From Octopus sinensis (taxonomy: Eukaryota), in assembly GCF_006345805.1 (NCBI RefSeq), contig NC_042998.1, forward strand, positions 68,696,001-68,760,000: a DNA stretch of 64,000 bases, in the 5' to 3' direction. Position 1 is the stretch's first letter. Each line of letters begins with the position of its first letter. A program made the position numbers and the translations under genes. Shown piece by piece: positions 10,461 to 35,086 of the stretch. The notes beneath the pieces are model-generated. The model searched no databases, was not told where the DNA came from, and was given only the letters and a program-made list of their open reading frames with translations.

Positions 10461-10816
10461 AATAATATTCTCTGTCGTTGGCTTACTTGCTTCTCTCCGT
10501 TGGATTACGGCTTGGGGCAACGTCGACACGAACTCACCAAACGACATCTGCAGGGCTGACTCAGCAGACACCATGTGTCCGTGGAAACATGTTTTCTCAG
10601 ATTTTGCTCAGCGGTTACATTTGATTGAAATGGCTTTTAAAGACCAAGTAGTAGCGCGAGAAGCCATGGCGCAAGAAGTTGTCAACCAATCAGATTTGAA
10701 CGGCGTTCTCGATCAGAAACTCTCTATTTTTATTAACAAAGTTGAAGATTTACATCTACGGATCAACAAAGTGGAGAACAAGTTACTTGACCTTCATGCT
10801 CGGATTAACTCAGACG
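10461..10816 (+). CDS. Exon A of an uncharacterised single-pass membrane protein (hydrophobic leader plus coiled coil)
   Basis: Acceptor ttgctttcag|A at 10460 and donor GACG|GTCAGT at 10817; 356 nt = 1+118 codons+1. Open frame IIFSVVGLLASLRWITAWGNVDTNSPNDICRADSADTMCPW...VLDQKLSIFINKVEDLHLRINKVENKLLDLHARINSD with 4-3 hydrophobic heptads and an NQS sequon. Confidence 0.85.
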
Positions 10817-10822
10817 GTCAGT

Positions 10823-11710
10823 TCATTACTATTTATTCATTATCATTTATTCATTTCTCTTTATTCATTTCATTATCATTTACTCATTGTCATTTATTCA
10901 TTACCATTTATTCATTATCACTTGTTCATTATCCTTACTTTTCATTTATTCATTTTATTTAATCATTATCATTTATTCATTGTCATTTATTCATTATCAT
11001 TTATTCATTATCACTTGTTCATTATCCTTACTTTTCATTTATTCATTTTATTTATTCATTATCATTTATTCATTGTCATTTATTCATTATCATTTACTCA
11101 TTGTCATTTATTCATTATCATTTATTCATTATCACCTGTTCATTATCTTTCATTGTCATTTATTCATTTTTATTTATTCATTATCATTGTCATTTATTCA
11201 TTATCATTTATTCATTATTACTTGTTCATTATCCTTTATTGTCATTTATTCATTTTTATTTATTCAATATCATTTATTCATTGTCATTTATTCATTATTA
11301 TTTACTCATTGTCATTTATTCATTATCATTTATTCATTATCACCTGTCCATTATCTTTCATTGTCATTTATTCATTTTTATTTATTCATTATCATTGTCA
11401 TTTATTCATTATCATTTATTCATTATTACTTGTTCATTATCCTTTATTGTCATTTATTCATTTTTATTTATTCATTATCATTTACTCATTGTCATTTATT
11501 CATTATCATTTATTCATTATTACTTGTTCATTATCCTTCATTATCATTTATTCATTGTGATTATTTATTATCATTTATTCATTATCATCTATTATCATCT
11601 ACTATTTATTCATTATAATTTGTTCATTTTTATTTATTGATTATCATTTATTAAATGTCATTTATACATTACCATTTATTAATTATCATCTGCTTATTAT
11701 CATTCATTGT
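10823..11710. repeat. TCAT-rich minisatellite (TTCATTATCATTTA-like) with about 93- and 208-bp higher-order periods
   Basis: The landmark atcacctg occurs at 11131 and 11339; cttgttcatt occurs at 10921, 11014, 11221 and 11429. Confidence 0.95.
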
Positions 11711-12639
11711 CATATATTATCATTTATTTATTATTGTTTAAACATATTTATTTTATTTGTTATTCAATTATTCCTTACCCATATATTCATCGCCTAATGG
11801 ACACGGGTATTGAACTATTTTCTCAAAGGTCATTAAGTACAAGCCCGCTACTAACATTATTCAGTCTGAATTTCGTTCGCCGTCTGTCTCTGGGTAATAG
11901 ATCTCCGAACAAAGGGGCAAATTGGTAGAGCTGTTAAAGTGTTGGATAGAATATCTCGAAGTAGTTTTTCCAATATCCTGCACTCTAAGTTCAAATATCG
12001 CAACGTTAGCTTTGTCTTTCATCCCTTTTGGAGTCGATACAAAAATGTACCAATCCAGAGGAAGGTAAGATGACGGAACTGTTCTCGTTCTTTATGTTCC
12101 AGCAGCAACGTCCATGATAATACTGGTTTCACTGTGAACCAACCAAAGTCGGCATTCTTTCCATTGGATGAATATTGGTGCCATGGAGATATGCAACTTA
12201 CATATATGGGAAACAGCTAGTTTTCCTCAAAACACTTTACTCAGCCCTTCACTTACATGTACAGATTAAAGGTCACCCTTGACCAAAGGAAGCTCTTTAT
12301 AGTTACCTGATCATTCTAATCCATCTCTAGGCAAATATTCATCTGGATCATCTGGAAATACCATACTGTTGTATCTGGAATTTAATTCTGTAACAACTAA
12401 ATAATTATTGCGTCTATTATATGCTGTTGTATAAATACGCAACTACGACGTTTTGGAAAAAATGCAAAACTTCATGTTGTAAATAACAATCTCTTGATAC
12501 TGTCACATTCTATGGCCAGTTTCCTTATAGTAGTCAGCCATGTCAAAAATGAGTGGAAGGAGAAAGGTAAAGAGATCAAGGATCGCGTGAAAGACTCTTG
12601 TTGAAATATGCACAAATATTAAAATTTAAATGAAAATTT

Positions 12640-13620
12640 AAAATATTAGCAGTGCTATACTATATAAAATGCCAACATCCTGTAGGATATAGGAAACATA
12701 ATAAAACATAAGGAAACTTAATAAGAAAAATATCAGGAAGACAATAAAAAACATTAGAAATATAAACCATATCCGAATTATATTAGAAAGAACATCCAGC
12801 TACTGCAGGTTAGGGGAAACACTTATATGTTAGATAAAAATAACCTATTATTGGGGATGTAATAATGGACTCCATATGGTGTAAATTATCGAAAGCGTAG
12901 ACGGAGAATAGGACGGGAAGAGCATAATTTTAGTCCACACGCGGTGGGGTACGTTGGATGTAGGTTCTGACAAATGTTCTCTAAATGGACTAAACAGTGA
13001 TTTACTTTGAGGGAATCAGGATTTTAGGATCGGTATTAAAAGTTCCAGGTCCTAAGGTTTAAGACAAAGAAGATAAGGTAGTCCCCGAGGGGAAATGTTG
13101 AAGCACGTGAAATTTTCCCTTAAGTCCTATTGTATTTATGCGGATTTCTTATGAAAATGTATTTACGTTTGCCAACATGATTATCCCTGGTGTTTATGAT
13201 TTCGGGTGCCTCCATGGAGCACAGGTTGCACTCGCCACCTCCGCCCATATAAGGTGAAGCAGTTCTCACCACAGATCAAAAGATTCCGTATGGTCTTTTA
13301 CCAGAATTTCAAGTCCCATACCAGTTCTGCCAGAGATGTAAATTTGTGCTTAGTCGGGTTCTTAAAAGACTGGACACAGAACAAAAATCTCCGCTTAAAC
13401 TGAGATGATGTGACTCCTATATAATGAAAGGCTTCTGTATTAGTCGAAACAGTGCCCTTATAAATTATGGTCTTTCTACGGCACTGATTAACTGCCGGGC
13501 ATTTAGAAAGGATTTTACATGGAATGTGGGGTAACTCATCGGACGGAATTTCATTAAGTCTCCAGTTCCACCTAAGTTCTGCGCCAACGACTGTATGATG
13601 GAGTACGATAATTTAACAGT
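12640..13620 (-). mobile_element. Penelope-like element, GIY-YIG endonuclease end (frameshifted)
   Basis: - strand pieces IIYKGTVSTNTEAFHYIGVTSSQFKRR, TSLAELVWDLK and ASPYMGGGGECNLCSME match the PLE C-terminal YIG..F..R and PY...C.LC pattern. Confidence 0.7.
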
Positions 13621-13668
13621 GCATCTGTTAAATATTTTGTGCTATCTACGCGTAAGTGTATGTATGTG

Positions 13669-13752
<84 letters not shown>

Positions 13753-14114
13753 TTATAGAGTTTCAGCTTTGCAGTCTTCAGTAAACAGTAGATAGCCGAA
13801 ACTTCGAATTAACTGTCAACTATACGCTTATAAAAGTATGTTAAATATGTCACTCTACTGACTCATAGAACGATCTTTCAAATTAATGCTTATTCTTTAA
13901 TCTATACAGCTTTACATAAAATGAAACGTTTGTATGTGTGTTTGTATCTATATCACAATATGTATTGAGGAATGAGTGTGTGAGGATATGTGTGCGTGTG
14001 TGCGTGCCTGTACTACAAACCACTTTTAAAGATCTTAATTGGCAAGCGTTTTAAAAGCCAATGATAATTATATAATAGAATATTATACAGAGAGAGAGAA
14101 AGAGAGAAATTATT

Positions 14115-14325
14115 TTACTCGTTTCAGTCATTTGACTGCGGCCATGCTAGAGCACCGCCTTTAGGCGAGCAAATCGCCCCCAGGACTTATACTTTGTAAG
14201 CTTAGTACTTATTCTATCGGTCTCTTTTGTCGAGCTGCTAGGTTACGGGGACGTAAACACACCAACATCGCTTGTGAAACGATGGTGGTGGAGGACAATC
14301 ACAGCCACAAACATATACATATATA
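14115..14325 (-). mobile_element. SINE S1, 3' half
   Basis: Reverse complement of ACGTCCCCGTAAC...GGCGGTGCTC..AGCATGGCCGCAGTCAAATGACTGAAAC. Confidence 0.85.
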
Positions 14326-14349
14326 CATACATTACATAAAAATATTTCT

Positions 14350-14520
14350 ATTTTCTATTTTTTCTATTATTTTCTCTCCCTGTTTATTTCTGTTCCTTTC
14401 TGTCGAAGAGCATAGGCTCGAAACGTAAAAGACTTTCTCACTTCCCGAGCGTTAACCTAATTCATTTGTTTGTTGTTTACACACCCGTCTTCGTCTTTTG
14501 TTTTTTCATAAATTCTCACC
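14350..14520 (+). mobile_element. Penelope-like terminal repeat with HHR-like motif at 14395-14432
   Basis: cttt-CTGTCGA-A-GAGC-atag-GCTC-GAAA-CG-TA-aaag; same family as 9590-9880. Confidence 0.6.
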
Positions 14521-14594
14521 ATGCATATATATACATACACATATATACATACATACACACACACAGACACACACACACACACATACACACACAT

Positions 14595-14631
<37 letters not shown>

Positions 14632-14863
14632 CACGAAGAGCAGACATGCATATTCTAAATATCTTAATTAGTATTAATTTCTTTAACGTAACATATTTTT
14701 TTCAGTTTGTTTTAGGCAGCTTAACCAAGCCCATACTGGAGCAGAACCCTCAAAGTAATAATAATGTTCGATGCATGTTTAAAACTTATTGATTGTTTCG
14801 TCACTTATATTGTGTCGGAACATTATTTGTTACTTTGCTTTTACCGTTTTCTTTCTCTTGTAG

Positions 14864-15042
14864 AATCCGTAGGGTTTTTGGTTATCGTAATCTTGGTCAT
14901 AGAATTGGTTATGAGATTTCAGCCGAGAATTCGACTTCTTCAGTTCTGGTTTAAAGAGAAAAACTTATCTTCGCCATCATCGTCTTCTTCGAATAAACAA
15001 GCTGTTGATTTAAGACGTGAATCGCCTTCATCTTCGTCCAAG
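14864..15042 (+). CDS. Exon B: transmembrane helix and Ser-rich juxtamembrane linker
   Basis: Acceptor tttctttctcttgtag|AA and donor AAG|GTAAAC; 179 nt = 2+59 codons. The phase-1 start matches the exon A end. Reads ESVGFLVIVILVIELVMRFQPRIRLLQFWFKEK...SSSSK, with basic residues after the TM. Confidence 0.8.
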
Positions 15043-15174
15043 GTAAACATAGCCCTCTCATTCAAATTCACTTATTCATTATCATTATAGACATTGCTGT
15101 TGTTGTTGCTGTTGTAATTATTATTGTTGTTGTCGTTGTTGTTGTTGTTGTAGTTGTTATCGTTAGTAGTAGTA

Positions 15175-15390
15175 TTATTAATTCGTCCATCATTGTCGAC
15201 AATGACCAAAGACATTACAAGGGAGAAAAAAACGTGACACGATGTGTTCGGCTGTGGCCAACCAGTCCGATGTGTGCTCGGAAGGGCTCTGTTGCAGGTC
15301 GGGCACTGATAGTCTATTAGGACCAAAGGCAAGGTGTTGGCTCATGCCCCGCATAGTTCGTGTTTTTTTCATGCTCCTTCAATCCTGTTC
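15175..15390 (-). mobile_element. RTE (BovB-like) LINE 3' end
   Basis: YQCPTCNR zinc knuckle and the tail SLVIVDNDGR(I). Confidence 0.7.
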
Positions 15391-16089
15391 TGTTCCTGGT
15401 GGTGGTGGTGGTGGTGGTGGAGGAGGAGGTGGTGATGGTGGTAGGGCAGGGACTGATTTGAACAAAACTCTAAACAAATTCCTTGTTTCGTACTTGTTTT
15501 TGTTTTAGTTGTTTTTGTTGTTATAATATTCGCCACATTCTTCGGGTATTTATTCTGTTATTCCTTTAATCTTTGTATTTTTTTGTTCTTTTATTCTTTA
15601 AACGTGTCTCGGTCGTTTGGGTGCGGCAATGCTGGAGCAACACATTGATTTAGTCGAATAAATTGGACCCGACCCCGGTGCTTATGTGAATACCTGAAAA
15701 GACTAGAGCGGGGAAGAAATTCTAGAAGGTGAGGGTGACGGAAAGGAAGAACCAGGCTTAGAGGATTAGGGAGGTGTGGGGTCGGTGGGGTGAACACAAC
15801 AAGGGTGATGAGAGGAGGAGGAGGAGGAGGAGGAGAAACGACCGAGACGACAATAAAAAAAAGCTTCTTCCCGGGACATATAGACTGATAGGGTCGGTTT
15901 CCGGTTTCCTTGGCGCATATATTCCACCCCACCTGGAGGGGACGCCAATCCGTCACAGTATTGCTCATTTTTGCCAGTTGAGAAAGAATGTCTGAGTGGA
16001 AATAACATAAACCCCACGAATTGTAATACACACACACATATACATGTGCGTGTGTGTGTTTTTGTGTGTGTGCATGTCTATGTATGCAT

Positions 16090-16325
16090 GTCATTGTTCA
16101 GTTTTATGTCAAGAACTCTTGCCAGTAGAGAAGGAGCCGATTTCTAACCTAGATCCAAGGCTCCTTCATTGGAATTTCAACATCAACAACAGGCTATTTT
16201 TGTTTGAATATGTGTATGTATGTATATATCTATGTATGTTATGTATGTATGTATGTATGTATGTATGTATGTATGTATGTATGTATGTATGTATGTATGT
16301 GTATATATATATATATATATATGTG

Positions 16326-16385
<60 letters not shown>

Positions 16386-16850
16386 TGATGTATGTATGTA
16401 TATATATATAAATGTGCAGATTTGTATGTTTTGTTTTTACAGTTCCAGTGATGGATTGGATCTATAGTCTTCGAATTAAGTATGTATGTATGTATGTATG
16501 TATGTATGTCTCTTCTATTTTTAATTATAATAAATCTTCCACCGAGGAGAGAGCGGGTTTCCAACAAAGATACAAGGCTCCATCTTTGGGATGTAGTTAA
16601 CACAGATAAATTCGCATTGGAACTTGAGAAAAGTCTTGCATATTTTTACTGTTCCACTCACAGATTGCAATTGTACTGTACGAATTAGCCGGTCAATTTC
16701 TCTATGTTTCTATGTATGATAAAGAAATAAGAATGAACCCGTGATTTTCTGATCTGTCTATTGTTATTTCTTCACACGGTTATCTCATTGATACATAAAT
16801 GGATTGACAAAATTCTTGGAACAGTCACACATCTGTTTAACTTCGCAAGG
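16090..16850 (-). mobile_element. Two head-to-tail R4/Dong-type LINE 3' ends separated by (CATA)n
   Basis: HREIDRLIRTVQLQSVSGTVKICKTFLKF at about 16620-16710, then a second copy [14 protein letters not shown] with the terminal hairpin GAAGGAGCC...GGCTCCTTC. Confidence 0.8.
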
Positions 16851-16924
16851 ACTGACCTGTTCATTGATTGTGAATATTTATGTATTCTTTCGAGCTCTCT
16901 ATTATCCCATTATAGCCATGTATG

Positions 16925-17000
<76 letters not shown>

Positions 17001-17380
17001 TATGATGGACTCCCTTGTGATAAACGACAAATTAGGGTTCCGTTACTTCTTGCTGAACAACCTGCGAAGATGAGTTGTTTATAAGGATCCAATGTTCGTG
17101 CTGTGCATTAGCTCAATTCCTTCATCAAATCGATATTACCTGAACAGATGCACAGGTGTGCCACGCGTCAGGTGTCGAAGTGATTGCAGAGCGACGTGAG
17201 ATGAAGTGTTTTGTGCAAGAAGACAACGCACGTTTCTCATTTTTTAATCCTTGAAGAGAACTTTTTTCTTGGTTGTCAGTAAGTAATAAATATATTAAGA
17301 ACGTTGACGATTTTAACATCCGTTCGTCCGACATTCTAACAGAAACAACAAATCTTCCACAAATTACATCAAAGGACTAA

Positions 17381-17826
17381 CATGGGGCTGTCAAATTATG
17401 TTGACAACATACTATCACTTTATCGTGCTGCTACTGCATAAATCTCTCTGAGAGATTTAGAAATATATTATTTCTATTTAAAAAATCAGTGAATGTATAT
17501 GTATATATACATATATGTTTTCAAAAGCGGATAGGCACCGACAGCTAGCAAACCATGCTACTCCAGACTGGTGATGAGCAATGACCCTGAAACTAGTCTC
17601 TAGTTGCTAGCTTGGCAGGGTGGAGGAGCTTGTCTCCACTTTGAAAACATAAGGACACAGGAAATGTATCAAGTCCAACAGGAAACAGTGTTTCCTAGGG
17701 CTAAATAACAGTAGAATGTTTCACTTTCATGGGACTGTCACATTAAGTTGACAACATGCTATCATTTTATCGTGCTGCTACCGCATAAATCTCTCTGAGA
17801 GATTTAGAAATATATTGTTTCTATTT
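17381..17826 (+). repeat. Partial tandem repeat, 347-bp period (about 98 bp duplicated), with degenerate HHR-like motif
   Basis: catggggctgtca...atttctatt at 17381 recurs at 17728. GTGATGAG...GAAACTAGTC lies at 17571-17598. Confidence 0.7.
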
Positions 17827-17924
17827 TTAAGGACTGACGCGTTAAATAATGGAACTCTGGCTACATTATATCTAAATATATAGAGATTCGAGAAATTACA
17901 ACTTTTACAATGGATACTGGAGTG

Positions 17925-18250
17925 GCTCATAGGCGCAGGAGTGGTTTATAGGCGCACGAGTGGATGTGTAGTAAGCAGCTTGCTTTATAACCTCATGTTT
18001 CCGGGTTCAGTCCCACTGCGTGCCACTTTGGGCAAGTGTCTTCTACTATAGCCTCGGGCCGACCAAAACCTTAGGAGTGGATTTGGTAGACGGAAATTGA
18101 AAGAAGCCCATCATGTGTGTGTGTGTGTGTGTGTGTGTCTGTGTCTGTGTCTGTGTTTGTCTCCCCAACATCGCTTGATAACCGATACTGATGTGTTTAC
18201 GTTCCCGTAACTTAGCGGTTCCGCAGTCAAATGATTGAAACAAATATAAG
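17925..18250 (+). mobile_element. SINE S1 with duplicated head
   Basis: Repeated gagtgg...ataggcgca start followed by the standard body. Confidence 0.85.
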
Positions 18251-19299
18251 AATAAAAATCTAGAGAGTAAGACATTACTTAAACTTACTTAGAATCATCA
18301 CAGACATCAGATGTAAGGGATAGAAAGAAACAGAATTAGTAAACAAACAATATCATTAAACTAATCATTACGTGGGTCTTAATATGTCAAATCATAAAAA
18401 CAATGCAGATAAAACTTTACTTAGCATCATTTTAGTTTGCACGCAGCCGACATTTGCAATGAAACAAGAAGAATCAAAATGAGAGACTATAGTGTCATGC
18501 GGAGTCAGAACAGAGTTTGTAGCCGCGGAAAGCTCCAACACCCACATTAGATGTTTCTTTTCATCACTTGTTTACAGTAAGTCGACAGAATGAAGGAAAA
18601 TATTTACTATCATTTAGTGAAGTTTTGGCATCTGATAAGCAAGTAATCGATAAATAAATACTCGTGACATTGATCGTACTTTTATCCCAATAATTATGAA
18701 GTTCTATTTAATTAGATGGTTTCAAGAGTCTGAGTTCTTGATATTAAAGTATTGATGTATGCACTTTTACCGTCACATATTTGTAATTAGAATTTCTATC
18801 TATCCGAATACTGTGTGTTCAGATAAATGGAAATACAAAGTCGCAAGAAAAGAAGTATGTAAAATAGTGACACTATAAATCTATGTTATGAGAGAATTTA
18901 TCCATTTACAATAGAAAATAAAACGAAAACTATGCTTTCAGCTTGTCCCGTGGAGGCGACGGACTTAGATTTCGAAGTGAAGAACAAAGATATTCTTTGT
19001 ATTAGGCTAAATGGAGACTTTGAACGACGTCACAAAATTTTAATTGAAAGATTTGCACCGGCTTTTTGTCTGTTTCTTTTTTATATTCTTAATTCGCTCA
19101 GAAAATTGGATAAAGGAAATACAGTTAAGGAAAGAAAAGAAGTATCTAGAAGGTATTTATTGTCATATGCAGCGTGGAATATTAATTAAGTCGTCATTCA
19201 AATTATTTAGCTTGAAGCATTGCAATCGCAGCAATGTCGGACAGAGAAGATAATTGCGTTCAGTTAAATAGAATTTACAATTCGCCTTTCCTTTTGCTC

Positions 19300-19488
19300 T
19301 TTTACTTGTTTCAGACATTTGACTGCCACCATGGTGGAGTACCGCTTTTAGTCGAATAAATCGCCCCCCAGGACTTATTCTTTGCAAGCCTAGTACTTAT
19401 TCTTTTGGGTCTATTTGCGGAACCATTATGTTACAGGGACGTAAACACACTAGCTTCGGTTCTCAAGCGATGTTGGGGAGACAAACAT

Positions 19489-19525
<37 letters not shown>

Positions 19526-19528
19526 ATA

Positions 19529-19562
<34 letters not shown>

Positions 19563-26146: not shown

Positions 26147-26240
<94 letters not shown>

Positions 26241-26722: not shown

Positions 26723-26800
<78 letters not shown>

Positions 26801-27013
26801 TATATATATATATATATATATACACATACATATAAATATACATACATATATATTAGTCATTATTCGGTAAAACCTTATAATTCTGTTTACAAAATTTTTA
26901 CTCGTCACCGTTTTTAACTTATGCAAAATAAATATATATACTTACGTATATAATATATAATCTCATATGTATTGACACATATATTATGCATATATATATA
27001 TATATATATATGC

Positions 27014-27075
<62 letters not shown>

Positions 27076-27283
27076 TATATGCATATATATATACATATAT
27101 ATATGCATATATAAATATATATTATATATATATATGCATATATATACGCATATATATATGTATGTATGTATGCATGTATATACGCAACAGTAACAACATT
27201 AGTACATCTATGGGACCATTTAATCATTTACACATGTTTAGCCAACATCAATACATACATAGTATTTATTTTACGCACGCACG

Positions 27284-27332
<49 letters not shown>

Positions 27333-27444
27333 GCACACTAAGTAATATTTTTTACAGACCGTCTTCCACTAAAGCAACAACAACAACATAAATAAATAAT
27401 AATAAATGCACTAGGTGACCCTTTATTTTGTTTTGTACTTTCAG

Positions 27445-27835
27445 AATGGTGTCTTGAACTTTTCCCCCAAACATGGAATTTCTCTGCGTAACGAAGTTTG
27501 CGTAATAATGTTTAAGAAGGAGAGTGAAAATATCTACGCCACATTAATGGAAACCCTCGTTAAACAGCTGGACAACACTCGTCTCGCAGTGCGGCCATTT
27601 TTGGCTGTCGAGGGACAAGACAGTCTTCGACATCTTCCTTATAGTAAAATATTCTTGGTGTTTGCCGAATGTTTGCCAAGTAAGAGGCCGGCATCTCCAA
27701 GTTCCCCTTCTTCCACTTCTGTTGCTTTGACCCCTTCCCCCTCTTCCCCATCCTGTCCTACTTCATTACAAACTAAAACCAATGAACAGGTTGAATTACA
27801 GATAGCATCCCTTAAAGTAATCAAGGCCCTCGGAG
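27445..27835 (+). CDS. Exon C: N-terminal part of a cytoplasmic alpha/beta (TIR/SEFIR-like) domain with an S/P-rich insert
   Basis: Acceptor ttttgtactttcag|AAT (phase 0, matches exon B) and donor GGAG|GTAAGA; 391 nt = 130 codons+1. Reads NGVLNFSPKHGISLRNEVCVIMFKKESENIYATLMETLVKQL...KIFLVFAECL...EQVELQIASLKVIKALG. Confidence 0.88.
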
Positions 27836-28429
27836 GTAAGACAAAGCTCTTGGTTACGCAACTTTATCTCAGAAGTTCTTTTCTGCTGTTGCATGCTGAC
27901 GCACACACGCATACATATATGTACGCCCTTACATGTTCACGCACATGCACATATGTATACAAATACATACACAAACAATTATTGTTATAGGTGTTATTTA
28001 GTCCGAGGTCAGCCGTTATCAAGCAAGTCTACGATCAAAGGCAACCTAGTCGTGGCCATCGCATCTTTTTCTTTTCTTTTTAAATAGCACTCAAGGCTTC
28101 TTATCCAGCTTGCCCTTCTCTAAGACAGTAGCAAGATATAATTTGAGAGAGATTCAGCTTATATTTCTAGCAGATCAAGCAAAGACGTAGAGGCTCCCTC
28201 GTTGACTTGCGTAATTTTCAAAGAACGTTAAGTGTTCACATAATTTAATGGGACTCATAATTTAAGAGGGTACATAAATTTAGGGGTCACCTGATTGATA
28301 GTTCTGAATGCTTCTTGTATGTGTGCGTGTGTGTGCGCGCGCGTGCGTGTGTTAATAACCAAGAATGTTATTCTTGTTTCACTTCATTGTGTCGCATGCA
28401 GGATGGTAGATGGTAAATTCAGTAGCTAA

Positions 28430-29270
28430 GGGGATAAACATAGAGGGGACAAATAAGGACAGACAAATAGATTAAGGCGATTACATTGACCCCAGTGCGT
28501 AACTAGTACTTAATTTATCGACTCCGAAAGGATGAAAGGCAAAGTCGACCTCGGTGGAGTTTGAACTCCGAACGTAAAGACAGATTAAATATCGCTAAGC
28601 ATTTCGCCCGGCGTGCTAACGTTTCTGCCAGCTCTCCGTCTTTTTAAAATATTCTTTTCTATTCTAGGCACAAGGCCCGAAATTTTGCGGAAGTGGACCA
28701 GTCGATTAGATCGACTCCAGTACGCAACTGGTACTTAATTTATCAGACCCGAAACGATGAATGGCAAAGTCGATCTCCGTGGAATTTGAACTCAGAACGT
28801 AAAGACAGACGAAATACTGCCAAGCATTTTGCCCGCCATGCTAACGTTCCTTATATCTTTATTGCCCACAAGGGACTAAACATAGAGAGGACAAACAAGG
28901 ACAGACAAAGGTATTAAGTCGATTACATCGACCGCAGTACGTAACTGGTACTTAATTTATCGACCCCGAAAGGATGAAAGGCAAAATCGACCTCGGCGGA
29001 ATTTGAACTCAGAACGTAGCGGCATACGAAATACCTATTTCTTTACTACCCACAAGGGGCTAAACACAGAAGGGACAAACAAGGATAGACAAACGGATTA
29101 AGTCGATTATATCGAATCCCAGTGCGTAAATGGTCTTATTTAATCGACCCCGAAAGACTGAAAAGCAAAGTCGACCTCGGCGGAATTTGAACTCAGAACG
29201 TAGCGGCAGACGAAATACCGCTAAGCATTTTGTCCGGCGAGCTAACGTTTTTGCAAGCTCGCCGCCTTCT
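28430..29270 (-). mobile_element. SINE family S2, multimeric cluster (about four core units)
   Basis: The core GTTCTGAGTTCAAATTCCGCCGAGGTCGACTTTGCCTTTCATCCTTTCGGGGTCGAT recurs four times on the - strand. Confidence 0.88.
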
Positions 29271-29734
29271 TCAGTCCAAAATATTACAATTTTTTAACAA
29301 AGACCACGGTTTTTTTTTTTTTTTTTGTGGTTTTGGGAAGGTTATATTTACCTAATTTTCGTCAAGTTTCCGCTTCTCTTAACGACAAAATAAATAAAGT
29401 CAAGGAATAATTAAACTAATTGCCCTGCTACAAGCAATATCAATAAATTGGTTAAGTCTAGGTAATTAGCTAAGTGTATAATGAAAAAGACCAGTTAGTC
29501 ACACTAAATATTGATCCTTCGATTTGACTTTTTACAAGCTTTTGTTATTGGCAAGAAGAAAACCATTCCTAGAAAGTAAAATATTCCATCAATATTATCT
29601 AATGCCATAAATTCTGTATATTTTCCATATTTCGGTAGCATTAATTATTGAGTAATGGCACTAAATTACGTAATCAAAATAATTATGAAGATTAATGTCA
29701 TATTAAGTATTGATTACTCACAGAATAAAGTGGT

Positions 29735-29900
29735 GATCTGGCAGAATCGCTTGCACACCGGACAAAAACGCTGATCGACATTTCGTCTGTCATTACGTTT
29801 AGAGTTCAAATTCCACCAAGATCTGCTTACTTTTTATCCTTTCGGGGTCGATAAAATAGTGCCAGTGGCGCACTGGGGTCGATGTAATCGACTTTCTACC
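29735..29900 (+). mobile_element. SINE S2, diverged monomer
   Basis: CTGGCAGAATCG...GAGTTCAAATTCC...CCTTTCGGGGTCGATAAAATAG. Confidence 0.75.
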
Positions 29901-30220
29901 CCCTTTCTTTTACTTTAGGTTTTGTGTGTATAGCAGAAAGGATTTTACTAATATGGATGAAATGTAGCCGCAAAATTCGAGGAGTGGGGCTATAATTGAT
30001 TACATTTACTTTAATATTTCGCTGGTTCTTAATTTTATACTCCGACTCCGAGAGGTTAAAAAGAAAAGTTGACTTTTGTGGTATTCAAAATCCGAGCGTA
30101 AAGAGATAAAACTAAATAGACGCAGGGATTGCTGTGCGGTAAAGATCACTTCAGTCTCACTGTGCAGCACTTTGGGCAAATGTCTTCTATTAAATATGTA
30201 TGTATGTAACATATATATAT

Positions 30221-30660
30221 AGGCGCAGGAGTGGCTGTGTGGTAAGTAGCTTGCTTCCCTACCACATGGTTCCGGGTTCATTCCCACTGCGTGGCACCTT
30301 GGGCAAGTGTCTTCTCCTAGAGTCTCGGGCCGACCAAAGCCTTTGGTAGACAGAAATTGAAAGAAGCCTGTCGTATATATGAATATGTATATATATATAT
30401 ATTATATATATATATATTATATATATATATATACGTGTTTGTGTGTGTGTAGTGTGTATATGCTTGTGTGCCTGTTTGTCCCCCAACATCGCTTGACAAC
30501 CGATGGTGGTGTGTTTACGTCCCCGTATCTTAGCGGTTCGGCGAAAGAGACCGATAGAATAAGTACTAGGCTTCCAAAGAATAAGTCCTGTGGTCGATTT
30601 GCTTGACTAAAGGCGGTGCTCCAGCATGGCAGCAGTCAAATGACTGAAATAAGTAAAAGT
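30221..30660 (+). mobile_element. SINE S1, full length
   Basis: Close to the family consensus seen across copies in this window. Confidence 0.9.
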
Positions 30661-31189
30661 GATGTGTGTGTGTATGTATGTATGTAAGTATGTATGTATG
30701 TATGTATGTATGTATGTATGTATGTATGTATGTATGTATGTGTGTGTATGTTTATCCTACACACACACACACCACTGCTTGACAACCACTGTTGTTTGAT
30801 TCCTTCCAGATAACTTAGCTGTTCGGCAAAGGAAACTGATAGGATAACACCAGTAATATACTGGACTATTTTAAAACTAATGTTAGCTTATCCCAACACT
30901 ATCTGTTGTTGCTAAAGCTGTTGTTGTTGTTATTGTTGTTGCTTGCCCCAAATCTAGTCTCAAATTCAAAGTATTTACACTTCAAAGAAGTATTATTTTT
31001 AATGTTGCCCCACTTAATATTTTCTATTGATAAAATTATTATTGGCAAAATTTGGAGTTAACGAGCAAGCAAGAGAACATAATTTCAACGTCTGCTTCAC
31101 TGAGACGTCTCGCAGGCTTCTCCCTTGGGTGTAAATACCGAAGGAGGATCTGAGTACAGGCTGATAAGAAAGGAAATCTCTGTATAATG

Positions 31190-31395
31190 AGAGTTTCAAA
31201 TTTTGGCACAGGACCAGTAATTTCGGCGGAGGGGGTTAAGTCGATTACTTCGACTCCAGTAGTCAACTGGTATTCATTTTATCAATCTCAAACGGATGAA
31301 TAGCAAAGTCGATTTTGGTGGCATTTGAACGCAGGAGGTAAAGTGCCGCTTAGTATTTTGCCGGGTGTGCTAATGATTCTGCCAACCCGCCGACT
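31190..31395 (-). mobile_element. SINE S2, diverged monomer
   Basis: Reverse complement of head, core and AAATTTTGGCACA tail. Confidence 0.7.
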
Positions 31396-31419
31396 TAAAT
31401 CTCTGTATAAAAAGAGTAC

Positions 31420-31755
31420 AAACCCCCTTCGGTCATGAATGGCCATAGGATTGCACCGAGAAAGTTACCCATCGAGGTACAAATCTGGGCCAGGTTGTTA
31501 ATGGAAGATCAGCAGTCGCCCATGCATACCAGCTTCTCCTCCCCACACCACTGAGGATCTCCAAGGGAAATTCAAAGGTCGATACAGCCTGGAACCACTG
31601 ACGTCGCTACTCATTTCTACAGTTCAGTAAACTGGAGCAGCGTGAGTTAAAGTGTTTTGTTCAAGAACACAACACAGAACTGGGTCCGGGAATCGAACTC
31701 ACTATCTCGTGAGAGTGAGCCCGACGTTCTAACCACTGAGCCATGCGCCTTCACA
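31420..31755 (-). mobile_element. SINE S3-related copy
   Basis: Reverse complement of GTGTTGTGTTCTTGAACAAAACAC...CTGCTCCAGTTTACTGAACTGTAGAAATG. Confidence 0.65.
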
Positions 31756-31890
31756 AATCTCTGTATAATAACGTTATAAATGCTAGCTCGTTGGTTGGTT
31801 GGTCGGTTGGTTGGTCGGTCGGTCGGTCGGTCAGTTACTTGGTTGGTTGGGAAAAAATCGCCAACGATACACACGCGGTGACATATTGAA

Positions 31891-31936
<46 letters not shown>

Positions 31937-32154
31937 CAACAGTGAACAGGTCGCGGTCTTAAAGCGACGAAAATATTTTGACAAATTAAATTTAAATGTT
32001 GAAGTGAATCTAACGGTTTTTGTGTGTTTCTTAAATGGCTTATAAACACCTTCCACGCTGCAATTGTTTTCGTTCCAGCACACGATCTCAGATCGGGTCA
32101 CTTGCTATACAAGTACATCTCCGTAAATATATATATATATATAATATATATATA

Positions 32155-32204
<50 letters not shown>

Positions 32205-32365
32205 CAATGGGCTTCTTTCAGTTTCTCTCTGTCAAATCCGCTAACAAGGCTTTGGTTGGCCCGAAGCTATAATAGAAAAAAATTTGCACAAGGTGCCACG
32301 CAGTGGAACTGAACACGAAACCACATGGTTGGGAAGCAAACGTCTTACCGCAAAACCATGCCTGC
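32205..32365 (-). mobile_element. SINE S1, 5' half
   Basis: Reverse complement of head and GAAAGAAGCCC. Confidence 0.8.
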
Positions 32366-32379
32366 ATTTTAGTCACTGA

Positions 32380-32760
32380 TATTGGAAAAGTATTTGATAA
32401 GCATTTGTTGGAATATGGGCACGTTATTCAAAATTGCTATTATGGTTCATGACGTGGCATGAGCATTGTCACAGTTGTTGGTTCTACACCATACATTGTT
32501 TTGCAGCCTGTTTTATCGTTTATTCTGCATAAAAATGTTTGCTAATATATTTTTTTTTTCTGGTTGATTTCCATTTTCTCTCTTATTTCCTTGTTTTTGT
32601 TGGCTGATACTGAGTTTTTATTTCGTTGTGTGTGGTAATGGATTGTTATGATTGAAATTCTCCCATGTTTTTGTTAGGCTGGTTATGTCAGTTGGGTAAT
32701 CATGAGATTTTCAATTGTTGCTGTTTTCGATGTGTTTCTTTTTAACTTCTACAAGCATTT
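32380..32760 (-). mobile_element. Highly degraded Penelope-like RT C-terminal fragment
   Basis: Fragments such as TIIAILNNVPIFQQMLIKYFSNIS resemble the PLE region after the RT; many stops. Confidence 0.4.
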
Positions 32761-33153
32761 TATTGCATGTGTGTACTTCAGTATCTAAATAATAGATTGG
32801 CAATGACTGAGCGGACATGTGATCGAAGGCGTTACAGTCATGGCCATCCCGTCTTTTGCATATTAAGAAAAACATTAGTCAGTACCAACTTTAATTTTTA
32901 CACGATAGGATGTGATTTGATAGAACTTAGTTGTTATTTCTAGCATATTGAGTAACCATACAGGTTTCTTTCTTGGTTTCTATCTATGTCGGTGATAGAG
33001 GTAATGTTGAAATCAGCAAACTGTAATTATGCTTTCTGGGGGTACGAACCTCGAGATTTTGATTTCAATTCCCACTACGTGACATATCCAGCCAGTATCT
33101 TTTACCATAATCTCGGAGCGTACCAAAAATACGTACGTACATACATACATACA

Positions 33154-33184
<31 letters not shown>

Positions 33185-33187
<3 letters not shown>

Positions 33188-33515
33188 CAATGATTTGGGA
33201 TAGAGAAGAGAAACTGTGCACAGCTGTGGGAATTAGCTGCCCAGCGGATGTTGACATAAATCTGAAGATCAGTGAAAAAGAGAACACCTATGCTGAACTA
33301 TTGAGAAATCTACATTTACTCTATCCAGATTACAAGTTCAGGTTCATACTTGTAATTATTGGGGCCCTGGGATATGTAACACACTGCCTAAATACCAATC
33401 TTGAGAAATTAGGCTTCTCAAAACCAGAAAGGAGAAAGCTGATTCGAAGACTACAGATCCATGCCATCACTGGAACTGTAAATGACTGAGCGGATCTGTA
33501 AATCTGTAAAACTTT
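33185..33515 (+). mobile_element. R4/Dong-type RLE LINE fragment starting at (CATA)n
   Basis: MIWDREEKLCTAVGISCPADVDINLKISEKENTYAELLRNLHLLYPDYKFRFILVIIGALGYVTH. Confidence 0.88.
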
Positions 33516-33746
33516 TGAGTGAAACTGGGTGGATATAAGCTACCCTCCGTACACTTTCTGCATGGCAATTCTTTTGACAAAGAAGTGCTTTGATTGCGGT
33601 AATAGCAGAAGGCAGTTTCTCAGAGTGCCGTGCAATGGAACTGAACCGAAAATCACGTGATTGTCAAATGAAATCACGTGACTGTGAAACGAACTTCTTA
33701 AACACACAGCTATGTTTTTTTAATTAAAATAGGTTTGCGAGTTTAC

Positions 33747-33799
<53 letters not shown>

Positions 33800-33944
33800 C
33801 ACACATGCACACATATATATCTATATATATGTGTGTGCATACATACATTCATGCACACACACACATACGCATATCATATTTAGAGTAGTCGTTGGTTATG
33901 CCCAGTAAGAAATATATATATGTATGTATGTGTGTGTATATGTT

Positions 33945-34125
33945 TGTAGCCCGAACCCACCCCAACATCGCTTGACAACCGATGCTGGTGTGTTTACGTC
34001 CCCGTAACTTAGCGGTTCAGCAAAGAAACCGATAGAATAAGTACTAGGCTTACAAAGAATAAGTCCTGGGTCGATTTGCTCGACTAAATGTGGTGCTCCA
34101 GCATGGCGACAGTCACGATTGGAAC
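33945..34125 (+). mobile_element. SINE S1, 3' half
   Basis: AACATCGCTTGACAACCGATGCTGGTGTGTTTACGTCCCCGTAACTTAGCGG. Confidence 0.85.
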
Positions 34126-34214
34126 ATGTATGTGTGTGTGTGTGTGTGCGTGTGTGCGTTTTTTTATACGTATGTGCGTATATACATATATACACATATA
34201 TATATGTGTTTGTA

Positions 34215-34400
34215 AGGAAAGCTTGCAAAATCGTTAGCACACAAAATGCTTAGCGCTATTTCTCCCATCTCTTTACGTTTTGAGTTCATATTCCACCAGC
34301 GTCAACTTTGCTTTTCATCCTTCGAGATCGATAAAATAAATACCAGTCATATGCCAGGGTTGATGTAATTGACTAAGCCCCTGCACTCTAAATTGCTAGC
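34215..34400 (+). mobile_element. SINE S2, diverged monomer
   Basis: CGTTAGCAC...GAGTTCATATTCC...TTTTCATCCTTCGAGATCGATAAAATAAATACCAG. Confidence 0.7.
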
Positions 34401-34859
34401 CTTGAACCTCTTGCAAAGGACCGGTGTCCCGTTCAGCAGGAATGTTGTCATCTTGGTCATTTGTTTGCCATAGAAACCGACGAACAGGTCTTATAAATCC
34501 TGGAGGCTGGGGGAAAGTGTGTGTGTGTGTGTATGTGTCTGTGTTTGCGTGTGTGTGTGTGTGCACGGAGTTATTGTTCATTTTAAGTTGGAAGATGAAA
34601 TAATATGTATTCCCTCGCTTCTTCTATTCATAAACACGAATGTCTCGTTTTGTATGTGTGCGTTTGTATATGTGTGTGTGTGTATGTGTTTGCCTTTATG
34701 TGTGTGCTCTTGCATGTCTGGCTCCATGTGTGTGTGTGTGTGTGTGTTTATTTTTCTTGTGTTCTACCCGAAACTTCAATGCTATAATCTCGAGAATATG
34801 TTTATACTATCCGCATTTATTATTCCTTCTCTCATTTTTCCTTCTTTCTTCCTTTGCAG

Positions 34860-35086
34860 CAAACGCCATAGTGATTATCACAAATGACGAAGGCTCAAAA
34901 AGACTTTCTGGCCATGTGTTGTACAACGCCCAACTTCGAATTATTCAATCCCAGGATATGTTGCAGGAACTCGCCTCTAAAGGAAAATTATTCAGTATTT
35001 GGAAAGAATTAACGTCACATCAAATTAGCCACATGCGAAAAATACTACTGTCGACATTGAACCCAAGATATGGCGGCTGTAAATGA
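34860..35086 (+). CDS. Exon D (terminal coding exon) of the same gene
   Basis: Long polypyrimidine acceptor ttttccttctttcttcctttgcag|CA (phase 1, matches exon C). Reads ANAIVIITNDEGSKRLSGHVLYNAQLRIIQSQDMLQELASKGKLFSIWKELTSHQISHMRKILLSTLNPRYGGCK, then TGA at 35084-35086. Confidence 0.88.

What the first reader, a model, noticed from the sequence alone, without database searches (positions are those of the whole stretch)
10461..35086. Hidden four-exon gene: coiled-coil ectodomain, one TM helix and a TIR/SEFIR-like cytoplasmic domain
Seen: four exons spread over 25 kb join in frame with canonical splice sites into about 383 aa. The leader is hydrophobic. The N-terminal part has two Cys, an NQS sequon and a clean heptad (L/F/V/I at 4-3 spacing over 34 aa). 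The TM contains one Glu and is followed by basic residues. The C-terminal ~190 aa alternate beta/alpha: VCVIMF, helix, AVRPFL, helix, KIFLVF, S/P insert, EQVELQIASLKVIKAL, ANAIVII, helix, KLFSIW, helix. Established: TIR and SEFIR domains are five-stranded flavodoxin-like folds, and TIR NADases carry a catalytic Glu in an ELxxA-type helix after strand C. Inference: ELQIA sits at that position. This may be a non-Toll, non-IL17R receptor that oligomerises through a coiled coil instead of LRR or Ig domains. I do not recognise the gene, and the fold assignment rests on secondary-structure pattern only.
Basis: partly seen in the sequence, partly recalled or inferred. Interest (0 to 1): 0.75.

Follow-up and report, generated by a model that had tools for sequence, protein, structure and literature searches.

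The report
Mollusc-only two-pass membrane protein gene
The four exons are real and form the last four of five coding exons of an octopus gene for a two-pass membrane protein found only in molluscs; its inner domain has a common flavodoxin-type fold, and a Toll-receptor-type (TIR/SEFIR) identity or NAD-cleaving activity could not be shown.

Summary
Observation confirmed. Four + strand exons (10461-10816, 14864-15042, 27445-27835, 34860-35086) join in frame through AG/GT sites into 383 aa. They match full-length mollusc proteins (E down to 4e-207) and an intronless cephalopod transcript contig.

The gene is not hidden and not complete. Orthologues are annotated as "uncharacterized protein". They carry about 54 more N-terminal residues on an exon that lies 32.6 kb upstream in a relative and was not found in this window.

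The hydrophobic "leader" is therefore a first membrane helix. The protein is a two-pass hairpin: N-terminus inside, a glycosylation-sequon-bearing helical hairpin outside, a second helix with a conserved Glu, and a C-terminal domain inside.

AlphaFold models of that domain (pLDDT 84 and 90) show a five-fold beta-alpha pattern. Foldseek gives only weak, generic hits (TM 0.53 or less). TIR domains rank no better than flavodoxins and pseudo-GTPases.

Pfam, PDB profile searches and hhalign give no TIR or SEFIR signal. The proposed catalytic Glu is Asp in 29 and Glu in 6 of 44 family members.

All 30 named relatives checked, plus the eight first-search hits, are molluscs. No Pfam family covers the domain.

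Verdict: a real, conserved, uncharacterised mollusc-restricted family. TIR identity is unproven. Interest is moderate.

The parts
10461..10816 (+). Exon A, the second coding exon of the gene. Its first base completes a Gly codon begun in a missing upstream exon. It encodes the end of TM1, a Cys-containing linker and the helical hairpin.
   Evidence: Acceptor ttcag|A and donor GACG|gtcagt. tblastn to P0001 residues 55-172, 84% identity, E = 6e-63.
10462..10515 (+). C-terminal part of transmembrane helix 1 (IIFSVVGLLASLRWITAW).
   Evidence: Aligns to the hydrophobic segment that starts after 25-54 N-terminal residues in full-length orthologues.
10549..10578 (+). Two conserved extracytoplasmic cysteines, C30 and C39 (the C...CPW motif).
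   Evidence: The CPW motif and the upstream Cys are kept in every orthologue that covers this region.
10582..10806 (+). Helical loop. Helix 1 is W41-V74. The turn carries the invariant N75-Q76-S/T sequon (10684-10692). Helix 2 is V82-I115, with an unbroken a/d heptad that runs into TM2.
   Evidence: Heptad count 17 of 23 in one register. N75 and Q76 are invariant, and RL.L.E.AFK.QV.AR is invariant. The hairpin geometry is inferred from the two-pass topology.
14864..15042 (+). Exon B. It encodes TM2 (S120-F137, 14866-14919) with the buried Glu E132 (14902-14904), the basic stop-transfer sequence RFQPRIR, and a Ser-rich linker.
   Evidence: Acceptor cttgtag|AA and donor CCAAG|gtaaac. E132, R136 and P139 are invariant in orthologues. 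tblastn E = 6e-24.
27445..27835 (+). Exon C. It encodes the conserved SPKHG motif, strands A-C and helices A-C of the cytosolic alpha/beta domain, and a disordered S/P-rich insert (27670-27762).
   Evidence: Acceptor tttcag|AAT and donor GGAG|gtaaga. tblastn E = 6e-61. AlphaFold secondary structure. Column make-up at the Glu: D 29, E 6, other 9 of 44.
34860..35086 (+). Exon D. It encodes strand D with the NDEGSK motif, helices D, strand E (LFSIW) and helix E with the invariant Gln. The TGA stop is at 35084-35086.
   Evidence: Acceptor tttgcag|CA. tblastn E = 2e-38. S144 is kept in 43 of 44 members, Q186 in 44 of 44, and D141 in 37 with Glu in 6 more.
10817..14863 (+). Intron between exons A and B. 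It opens with an 887-bp AT-rich tandem array at 10822-11708.
15043..27444 (+). Intron between exons B and C (12.4 kb). It is rich in microsatellites and holds a decayed mariner/Mos1-type transposase remnant at 23640-24718.
27836..34859 (+). Intron between exons C and D (7.0 kb), with SINE-like tandem units at 28431-29219.

Best explanation
**Shown.** Window 10461-35086 holds coding exons 2 to 5 of a five-exon octopus gene. The gene is conserved across cephalopods, gastropods and bivalves. Everywhere it is annotated, it is an uncharacterised protein.

**Topology, inferred from sequence rules.** The product is a two-pass membrane protein.
- A short N-terminal tail sits in the cytosol. Most of it is encoded on an exon upstream of the window.
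- TM1 acts as a signal anchor.
- An extracytoplasmic loop of about 100 aa follows. It has a Cys pair, then two roughly 35-residue amphipathic helices joined at a conserved N-Q-S/T sequon. These helices must form an antiparallel hairpin, and the second runs straight into TM2.
- TM2 carries an invariant buried Glu and is followed by a conserved basic cluster.
- A Ser/Pro-rich linker leads to a C-terminal cytosolic domain of about 165 aa.

**Fold of the domain (AlphaFold).** The domain shows a five-fold beta-alpha pattern of flavodoxin type. I infer from the secondary structure, not from coordinates, that its best-conserved residues lie at the C-terminal ends of the strands. These are C20/F24, D/E76, D141-x-G-S144, Y153-N154, S177 and Q186. 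In this fold class that edge is where ligands or partners bind.

**Mechanism (inferred, not shown).** The heptad hairpins of two or more chains pack into a helical bundle outside the cell or in the lumen of the secretory pathway. The buried Glu mediates packing within the membrane, either with TM1 or with a partner subunit. The state of the bundle is passed through TM2 to the cytosolic domains, bringing them together. Those domains then act as a partner- or small-ligand-binding signalling or scaffolding module through the conserved acidic/Ser patch. Paralogues in bivalves and gastropods put the same C-terminal domain behind much longer coiled coils. This fits a modular 'coiled-coil stalk plus cytosolic module' family.
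For: **Gene and exons.**. Orthologues score E = 4e-207 to 1e-67.

**Transcript support.** A 1594-nt contig from run SRR20545816 carries an uninterrupted 431-aa orthologous ORF that is colinear across all three junctions. A second isoform, P0003, has a 25-aa insertion exactly at the B/C junction.

**Missing first exon.** It lies 32.6 kb upstream of the second exon in locus L001 and was not found in the window.

**Purifying selection.**, compared with intron identity.

**Topology.**
- Orthologues have 25-54 residues before the hydrophobic segment.
- S-D-E is invariant before TM2 and R..P(R/K) after it.
- The loop has an invariant N-Q-S/T and a conserved Cys pair.
- The C-terminal domain has a single conserved Cys.

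**Fold.** AlphaFold gives pLDDT 83.9 / pTM 0.79 and pLDDT 89.7 / pTM 0.87, with the order bA-aA-bB-aB-bC-aC-bD-aD-bE-aE. Foldseek hits are flavodoxins, flavodiiron flavodoxin domains, NrdI, WrbA, TIRs and CheY-like proteins.

**Family.** There are 136 representatives at E <= 1e-3. All 30 named members looked up are molluscs, as are the eight hits. Paralogues have long coiled coils before the domain, and no Pfam model covers it.
Against: - No experiment and no RNA-seq from this species was available.
- Topology rests on sequence rules, not on a predictor or an assay.
- I could not inspect model coordinates. Strand order and the clustering of conserved residues are therefore inferred from secondary structure only.
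- Subcellular location is unknown.
- One paralogue model (P0084, Mercenaria) has Ig and fn3 domains before TM1. These would be cytosolic under this topology. That means either a fused gene model or a problem for the topology in that branch.
- The orthologue group is slowly evolving and looks single-copy per species among the hits I examined. That fits a housekeeping membrane role as well as a receptor.
- Oligomerisation and signalling are conjecture.
Confidence: 0.6

Rival explanations
1. The C-terminal domain is a very divergent member of the TIR (or SEFIR) superfamily. It signals by homotypic assembly once the coiled coil brings copies together. It may also cleave NAD+ using the acidic residue at the start of helix C.
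For: - The secondary-structure order is the same as in TIR.
- TIR domains recur among the best Foldseek hits in both searches. RRS1 scores E = 2.6e-3 with TMt 0.54, one bacterial TIR scores 9e-4 with TMt 0.52, and RPS4, RUN1, SNC1, SpbK and SARM1 also appear.
- The position is acidic in 35 of 44 members.
- The domain sits after a membrane helix, as in TLR, IL-1R and IL-17R.
- The hhalign test is weak. A MyD88 profile finds the true TIR of SARM1 at only 4.4% probability, so a very remote TIR would be missed.
Against: - No TIR, TIR_2 or SEFIR Pfam hit at E <= 10 in any of 44 members, nor in the whole protein.
- The PDB profile search found no TIR.
- hhalign gives 0.2-0.8% against the MyD88 profile, TLR2 TIR and SARM1 TIR.
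- Foldseek scores for TIRs are no better than for flavodoxins, lumazine synthase, IRGQ or CENP-M, and every TM-score is 0.54 or less.
- The box 1, box 2 (RDxxPG) and box 3 motifs are absent, read directly.
- The candidate residue is Asp in 29 of 44 and non-acidic in 9 of 44.
- The best-conserved residues lie elsewhere.
Confidence: 0.2
2. The domain is a degenerate nucleotide-binding (pseudo-GTPase-like) module. It has lost the P-loop and serves as a protein-binding platform, as CENP-M and IRGQ do.
For: - IRGQ is the best PDB hit for the cleaner model (E = 3e-4, TM 0.45). CENP-M and G-alpha chains also appear.
- Some motifs loosely recall G3, G4 and G5. There is an acidic residue at the end of strand C (D/E in 41 of 44), (N/R/K)-D after strand D, and a conserved Ser on the last strand.
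Against: - There is no Walker A motif. The bA-aA loop reads FKKESEN.
- A helix lies between strands B and C. That implies a parallel crossover rather than the antiparallel b2-b3 hairpin of G domains.
- TM-scores are as low as for every other hit.
- No Ras, GTPase or AAA Pfam signal at E <= 10.
Confidence: 0.1
3. The protein is not a receptor. It is a structural or organising protein of an internal membrane (ER, Golgi or nuclear envelope). Its luminal helical hairpin sets spacing or tethers partners, and the cytosolic domain anchors it.
For: - High conservation across Mollusca, at 36-45% identity with many invariant motifs. This fits a core cellular role better than a fast-evolving immune receptor.
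- Paralogues carry 350-730-aa coiled coils between the two membrane helices.
- No ligand-binding domain is seen in the loop.
Against: - No sorting signal was identified.
- Tandem paralogue clusters and lineage-specific expansion in bivalves and gastropods are typical of environment-facing families (adjacent accessions on one contig).
- The conserved polar patch on the cytosolic domain suggests more than anchoring.
Confidence: 0.15
4. A chance set of open frames in repeat-rich sequence, or a dead pseudogene.
For: The window is full of microsatellites and transposon debris that produce long spurious ORFs. No start codon lies in the window.
Against: - Orthologue matches reach E = 4e-207.
- A spliced transcript exists in a relative.
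- There are no stops or frameshifts. The exons are more conserved than the introns, with a third-position bias in the differences.
Confidence: 0.01

Closest known systems
TIR domain superfamily (Pfam PF01582/PF13676; TLR, IL-1R, MyD88, SARM1, plant and bacterial TIRs)
   Same: - A five-fold beta-alpha, flavodoxin-type domain of about 150 aa.
- It is placed in the cytosol after a membrane helix.
- An acidic residue often sits at the start of helix C.
- TIRs appear among the top Foldseek hits.
   Different: - No sequence or profile similarity.
- No box 1, 2 or 3 motifs.
- The acidic residue is mostly Asp and is not invariant.
- TM-scores of 0.54 or less are no better than for unrelated flavodoxin-like proteins.
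- The ectodomain is a helical hairpin between two membrane helices, not LRR or Ig domains on a single-pass chain.
SEFIR domain (Pfam PF08357; IL-17 receptors, Act1)
   Same: A cytosolic alpha/beta domain related to TIR that follows a membrane helix and works by homotypic contacts.
   Different: - No Pfam SEFIR hit at E <= 10.
- No SEFIR structure appears in the top 50 Foldseek hits of either model.
Flavodoxin-like fold in general (flavodoxin, NrdI, WrbA, CheY-like receivers)
   Same: - The order of secondary-structure elements.
- The best and most numerous Foldseek matches.
- Conserved residues lie near the C-terminal ends of the strands.
   Different: - No FMN-binding or phospho-acceptor motifs.
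- TM-scores are only 0.35-0.52.
- No sequence similarity.
Pseudo-GTPases IRGQ and CENP-M
   Same: - A small alpha/beta domain without a P-loop.
- IRGQ is the top hit for the cleaner model.
   Different: - The secondary structure implies an all-parallel sheet.
- TM-score is 0.45.
- No sequence similarity.
Bacterial two-pass sensors (methyl-accepting chemotaxis proteins, many sensor kinases). This is a resemblance in architecture only.
   Same: An N-in, TM1, extracytoplasmic helical bundle, TM2, cytosolic output module layout. The outer helix runs directly into TM2.
   Different: - No HAMP, kinase or MCP signalling domain.
- The protein is eukaryotic and restricted to molluscs.
- No homology is claimed.

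Membership tests
TIR domain superfamily | Significant match to TIR profile models (Pfam TIR or TIR_2) or to solved TIR sequences | tested here: not met
   - No Pfam hit for the 383-aa model at E <= 1.
- No TIR family among hits at E <= 10 for 44 domain members.
- The profile search against PDB sequences found no TIR at E <= 10.
TIR domain superfamily | Profile-profile similarity to TIR | tested here: inconclusive
   - hhalign of A3 and A4 against a MyD88-TIR profile, TLR2 TIR and SARM1 TIR gives probabilities of 0.2-0.8%.
- The controls show low power. The MyD88 profile finds TLR2 at 96.5% but the true TIR of SARM1 at only 4.4%.
TIR domain superfamily | Five-stranded parallel sheet with alternating helices (bA-aA ... 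bE-aE) | tested here: met
   AlphaFold secondary-structure order in two models, pLDDT 83.9 and 89.7.
TIR domain superfamily | Structural match to TIR that is clearly better than to other flavodoxin-like folds | tested here: not met
   TIR hits score E 9e-4 to 1.2e-2 with TM 0.32-0.54. Flavodoxins, flavodiiron domains, lumazine synthase, IRGQ and CENP-M score the same or better.
TIR domain superfamily | Box 1 (F/Y-D-x-F-I-S-Y), box 2 / BB loop (R-D-x-x-P-G) and box 3 (F-W) motifs. The motif definitions come from my own knowledge. | tested here: not met
   Read from alignment A3. Strand A is x-C-V-I-S-F. No RDxxPG motif is present. The nearly invariant Pro lies two residues before strand C. The last strand reads F-S-x-W/Y.
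NAD+-cleaving TIR enzymes | Invariant catalytic Glu at the start of helix C | tested here: not met
   The column of E295 (ELQIA) holds D 29, E 6, S 2, G 2, A 1, T 1 and others, of 44. In gastropod orthologues it is E, D, D, D.
NAD+-cleaving TIR enzymes | NAD+ hydrolase or cyclase activity | not testable with these tools
   Needs a biochemical assay.
SEFIR domain | Match to Pfam SEFIR or structural match to IL-17R or Act1 SEFIR | tested here: not met
   No SEFIR hit at E <= 10. No SEFIR chain in the top 50 of either Foldseek search.
Flavodoxin-like fold (SCOP c.23 class) | Three-layer alpha/beta/alpha sandwich with five beta-alpha units | tested here: met
   for secondary structure. Most Foldseek hits are of this class. 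The 2-1-3-4-5 strand order was not checked.
P-loop GTPase / pseudo-GTPase | Walker A (GxxxxGK[ST]) after strand 1, and an antiparallel b2-b3 hairpin | tested here: not met
   The loop after strand A is FKKESEN. A helix separates strands B and C. No GTPase Pfam signal.
   Full-length orthologues have 25-54 residues before a hydrophobic segment of about 20 residues. Exon A lacks a start codon. The first coding exon is separate and lies 32.6 kb upstream in L001.
Mollusc family of this protein (unnamed) | Colinear match over TM1, loop, TM2 and C-terminal domain, with the invariant motifs RL.L.E.AFK.QV.AR, SDE..GF, SPKHG, NDE.SK, LYN and SHQ.SH.RKI | tested here: met
   Alignment A1 has 84 invariant columns in seven sequences from cephalopods and gastropods.

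The most novel reading that the evidence does not exclude
This gene is the conserved founding member of an undescribed, mollusc-restricted family of two-pass membrane receptors. The extracytoplasmic coiled-coil hairpin drives oligomerisation. The cytosolic domain is a new superfamily-level offshoot of the TIR/flavodoxin-like fold and signals through its conserved acidic/Ser patch, either by homotypic assembly or by acting on a nucleotide-type ligand.
Probability: 0.2. Interest if true: 0.7.

Novelty: new variant of a known kind. Interest (0 to 1): 0.45.

Why it matters
**Annotation.** The window shows four of the gene's five coding exons. This corrects the truncated O. bimaculoides model, which starts in an intron because exon A falls in a run of N in that assembly.

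**Biology.** The gene belongs to a family seen only in molluscs. The searches found 136 representative proteins, and every named one I checked is a mollusc. The C-terminal domain folds with high confidence but matches no Pfam family. Bivalves and gastropods have placed it behind coiled coils of up to about 700 residues.

Lineage-restricted membrane proteins that combine a conserved buried charge with a conserved cytosolic module are good candidates for unknown signalling or membrane-organising systems.

If the domain proves to be TIR-related, the known set of immune-type signalling modules in a phylum with heavily expanded innate immunity would grow. If it does not, it is a new domain family worth a structure and a name.

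Tried and rejected
- **Missing first exon.** tblastn with the N-termini of two cephalopod orthologues found nothing in the window better than E = 0.04, and that hit lies in low-complexity sequence. I conclude the exon lies upstream of the window. This fits the 32.6-kb first intron in L001.
- **Cassette exon.** The 25-aa cassette of isoform P0003 was not found in the B-C intron.
- **Direct family searches.** All came back empty:
  - Pfam on the whole model.
  - Pfam at E <= 10 on 44 members.
  - PADLOC on 43 members.
  - PDB sequences searched by phmmer and by profile.
  - Rfam on the window.
- **Spliced protein for structure prediction.** Structure prediction turned the spliced window protein away because it is not contiguous in the window. 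I used the 97%-identical O. bimaculoides domain instead, plus an insert-free Gigantopelta orthologue.
- **Foldseek against viral structures.** Only generic alpha/beta hits.
- **Word-indexed search with the domain profile.** It returned few hits. The exhaustive representative search was the useful one.
- **Last protein search.** I spent it on MyD88 TIR to build a TIR profile, but it returned only vertebrate MyD88. The hhalign test therefore has little reach, as the SARM1 control shows.
- **Literature.** Searches for 19 accession or locus names of family members found no paper.
- **Pseudo-GTPase reading.** Considered and ranked low (rival confidence 0.1): no P-loop, and a helix lies between strands B and C.
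- **Signal-peptide reading.** Considered and rejected because of the position and length of the hydrophobic segment.

Full report
**1. What is in the sequence**

The window is AT-rich eukaryotic DNA, full of microsatellites and transposon debris. On the + strand, four open stretches are bounded by canonical splice signals:
- exon A: 10461/10462-10816
- exon B: 14864-15042
- exon C: 27445-27835
- exon D: 34860-35086, ending in TGA

The sites read ttcag|A...GACG|gtcagt, cttgtag|AA...CCAAG|gtaaac, tttcag|AAT...GGAG|gtaaga and tttgcag|CA. The intron phases agree, and the join gives 383 codons plus a stop.

**2. It is a real, expressed, conserved gene**

A search of 5.8 billion proteins gave eight hits:
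- A 435-aa octopod protein, 84% identical over the whole model (E = 4e-207).
- Two cephalopod proteins assembled from sequencing runs (69-74% identity).
- A 298-aa O. bimaculoides model, LOC106867245 (94% identity).
- Gastropod proteins from Babylonia, Pomacea, Batillaria and Patella (36-40% identity, E about 1e-70).

All named hits are 'uncharacterized' or 'hypothetical'.

Each exon matches these proteins separately (E from 6e-24 to 6e-63). The orthologues are colinear across all three junctions.

One cephalopod orthologue is encoded without interruption on a 1594-nt contig assembled from run SRR20545816. I read this contig as a spliced mRNA. A second isoform carries a 25-aa insertion exactly at the B/C junction, which marks that intron position as conserved.

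The window is syntenic with O. bimaculoides chromosome record CM046602.1, at about 90% nucleotide identity in introns. Exons B, C and D are 99.4, 97.4 and 96.0% identical, with no indels. Twelve of the 20 differences fall on third codon positions. The window therefore comes from a close relative of O. bimaculoides, and the gene is under purifying selection.

**3.

Exon A has no start codon before M38. Its first base completes a Gly codon.

Full-length orthologues have 25-54 residues before the hydrophobic segment. In the genomic locus of the 435-aa orthologue the gene has five coding exons. The first encodes residues 1-54 and lies 32.6 kb upstream of the exon that corresponds to exon A. No match to that exon exists in the 10.4 kb of window upstream of exon A. 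It most likely lies outside the window.

The hydrophobic 'leader' is therefore the end of a first transmembrane helix of about 20 residues, not a signal peptide.

Several conserved features point to an N-in, loop-out, C-in hairpin:
- The residues before TM2 are acidic (invariant S-D-E).
- The residues after TM2 are basic (invariant R..P, then R/K).
- The loop has a conserved Cys pair and an invariant N-Q-S/T sequon.
- The C-terminal domain has a single conserved Cys.

This topology is an inference from sequence rules.

The loop has two helices of about 35 residues each, joined at the sequon. To return to the membrane they must form an antiparallel hairpin.

The O. bimaculoides model is truncated. 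It begins at an ATG in the intron just upstream of exon B. In the DNA returned for that locus, the region where exon A should lie is a run of N.

**4. The C-terminal domain**

An exhaustive profile search of 1.84 billion representative proteins found 136 relatives at E <= 1e-3 and 77 at E <= 1e-10.

Besides the orthologue group, the last 165 or so residues recur at the C-terminus of proteins of 400-1022 aa. In these, the parts before the domain are membrane helices plus long coiled coils. One model also has Ig and fn3 domains. No Pfam family covers the shared domain.

All 30 named members looked up are gastropods or bivalves, and the eight hits are cephalopods and gastropods. Several members have adjacent accession numbers on one contig (Haliotis, Mercenaria, Sinanodonta), and two Solemya members share a contig. 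This suggests tandem clusters.

Two AlphaFold models were made from 43- and 44-sequence alignments:
- The O. bimaculoides domain, which is 97% identical to the window. It gave pLDDT 83.9 and pTM 0.79, with the S/P insert disordered.
- The insert-free Gigantopelta orthologue. It gave pLDDT 89.7 and pTM 0.87.

The spliced window protein itself was not accepted by the tool.

Both models give the order bA-aA-bB-aB-bC-aC-bD-aD-bE-aE.

**5. Is it TIR or SEFIR?**

Foldseek against the PDB found only marginal matches, with best E values of 3e-4 to 4e-4 and TM-scores of 0.54 or less.

TIR domains do recur: RRS1, RPS4, RUN1, SNC1, SpbK, SARM1 and one bacterial TIR. But they score level with flavodoxins, flavodiiron flavodoxin domains, NrdI, WrbA, lumazine synthase and the pseudo-GTPases IRGQ and CENP-M. 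The viral structure library gave nothing specific.

Sequence methods gave no signal:
- No Pfam hit for the whole protein.
- No TIR, TIR_2 or SEFIR hit at E <= 10 in any of 44 members.
- No TIR in a profile search of PDB sequences.
- hhalign probabilities of 0.2-0.8% against a MyD88-TIR profile, the TLR2 TIR and the SARM1 TIR. The TLR2 and SARM1 sequences were checked letter for letter against PDB entries. The MyD88 sequence was checked by its PDB score (E about 1e-100).

The controls limit this last test. The MyD88 profile finds TLR2 at 96.5% but the genuine TIR of SARM1 at only 4.4%. A very remote TIR relationship cannot be excluded this way.

The proposed catalytic Glu (E295, window 27793-27795) is not conserved as Glu. 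Its column holds Asp in 29, Glu in 6 and other residues in 9 of 44 members.

The best-conserved positions are elsewhere (domain numbering, counts out of 44):

| Position | Count |
|---|---|
| C20 | 40 |
| F24 | 41 |
| P66 | 42 |
| D/E76 (end of strand C) | 41 |
| D141 | 37, plus 6 Glu |
| S144 | 43 |
| Y153 | 39 |
| N154 | 36 |
| S177 | 41 |
| Q186 | 44 |

By their place in the secondary structure, most of these sit at or just after the C-terminal ends of strands. That is where flavodoxin-like domains bind ligands or partners. This placement is an inference, because I had no access to coordinates.

**6. Most likely function**

What is shown is a conserved, mollusc-restricted, two-pass membrane protein with a confidently folded cytosolic alpha/beta domain of no known family.

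What I infer is this. The amphipathic hairpins of two or more chains pack into a helical bundle on the extracytoplasmic side. The invariant Glu in TM2 mediates packing within the membrane, with TM1 or with a partner. The cytosolic domains, brought together, bind a partner or a small ligand through the conserved acidic/Ser patch. The Ser/Pro-rich linkers would be regulatory.

The architecture resembles bacterial two-pass sensors in layout only.

The rivals are:
- A very divergent TIR-type module (about 0.2). NAD+ cleavage is much less likely than that.
- A pseudo-GTPase-like platform (about 0.1).
- A structural role in an internal membrane (about 0.15).

A chance or pseudogene origin is excluded.

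**7. Novelty and verdict**

The gene is already predicted in public annotations, so it is not 'hidden'. But it is uncharacterised. Its O. bimaculoides model is truncated. Its C-terminal domain is not in Pfam, and I found no paper naming any of 19 family accessions or locus names.

I rate it a new variant of a known kind: a flavodoxin-type cytosolic module on an unusual two-pass coiled-coil scaffold, restricted to molluscs.

Interest is moderate at 0.45.

Noticed in passing
window 10822-11708: An 887-bp AT-rich tandem array starts six bases after the exon A donor site. Its unit is 14 bp (TTCATTATCATTTA), with a 208-bp higher-order period. It produces spurious ORFs of 180-270 aa in all three + frames (FIHYHLFI...).
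   Followed up: partly
window 23640-24718 (+): A decayed mariner/Mos1-type transposase lies inside the B-C intron. The HTH_48 domain scores E = 1.2e-8 at 23640-23864, and a later piece carries the HHDNAPAHT motif. The reading frame is broken into at least three pieces.
   Followed up: partly
window 110-1012 (-): A 301-aa open stretch with a LINE endonuclease/reverse-transcriptase N-terminal domain (Exo_endo_phos_2, E = 8e-7). A C2H2 zinc-finger-like ORF lies nearby at 2274-2624 (+).
   Followed up: partly
window 1977-2219 (-), 9060-9284 (+), 33229-33486 (+), 52577-53044 (+): Several copies of one retroelement-like coding tail (...LLYPDYKF.F..VIIGALGYVTHCLNTNLEKLGFSKPERRKLIRRLQI...). The two copies tested have no Pfam match. 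One copy sits in the C-D intron.
   Followed up: no
window 28431-29219, and e.g. 63330-63557: SINE-like units of 184-225 bp in tandem. Related copies are scattered through the window and give the recurring translated string ...FQFPSTKS..ALVGPRL on both strands.
   Followed up: no
L003 (O. bimaculoides CM046602.1) 3149-6138 and 10001-10100: RefSeq model LOC106867245 (298 aa) starts at an ATG in the intron just upstream of exon B. It lacks the first two coding exons. The position where exon A should lie is a run of N in the DNA returned.
   Followed up: yes
protein P0003 (cephalopod, sequencing-run assembly): An isoform with a 25-aa insertion (AGKTPSGTNQKDPQSRGFSSARPYH) exactly at the exon B/C junction, which implies an alternative cassette exon. 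No counterpart was found in the window's 12.4-kb intron.
   Followed up: yes
protein P0084 (Mercenaria mercenaria XP_053372610.1, 1000 aa): A paralogue model with Ig and fn3 domains before TM1, then a coiled coil, TM2 and the shared C-terminal domain. Under the N-in topology the Ig and fn3 domains would be cytosolic. Either the gene model is fused, or the topology differs in that branch.
   Followed up: no
paralogues in Haliotis cracherodii, Mercenaria mercenaria, Sinanodonta woodiana, Solemya velum: Family members have adjacent or near-adjacent accession numbers on the same contig. This suggests tandem gene clusters and lineage-specific expansion in bivalves and gastropods.
   Followed up: no
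protein P0001: The best hit is labelled 'LOC115232463 [Argonauta hians]' and comes from assembly GCA_054771915.1. The organism label and the LOC-style name looked oddly paired to me. I did not check this.
   Followed up: no
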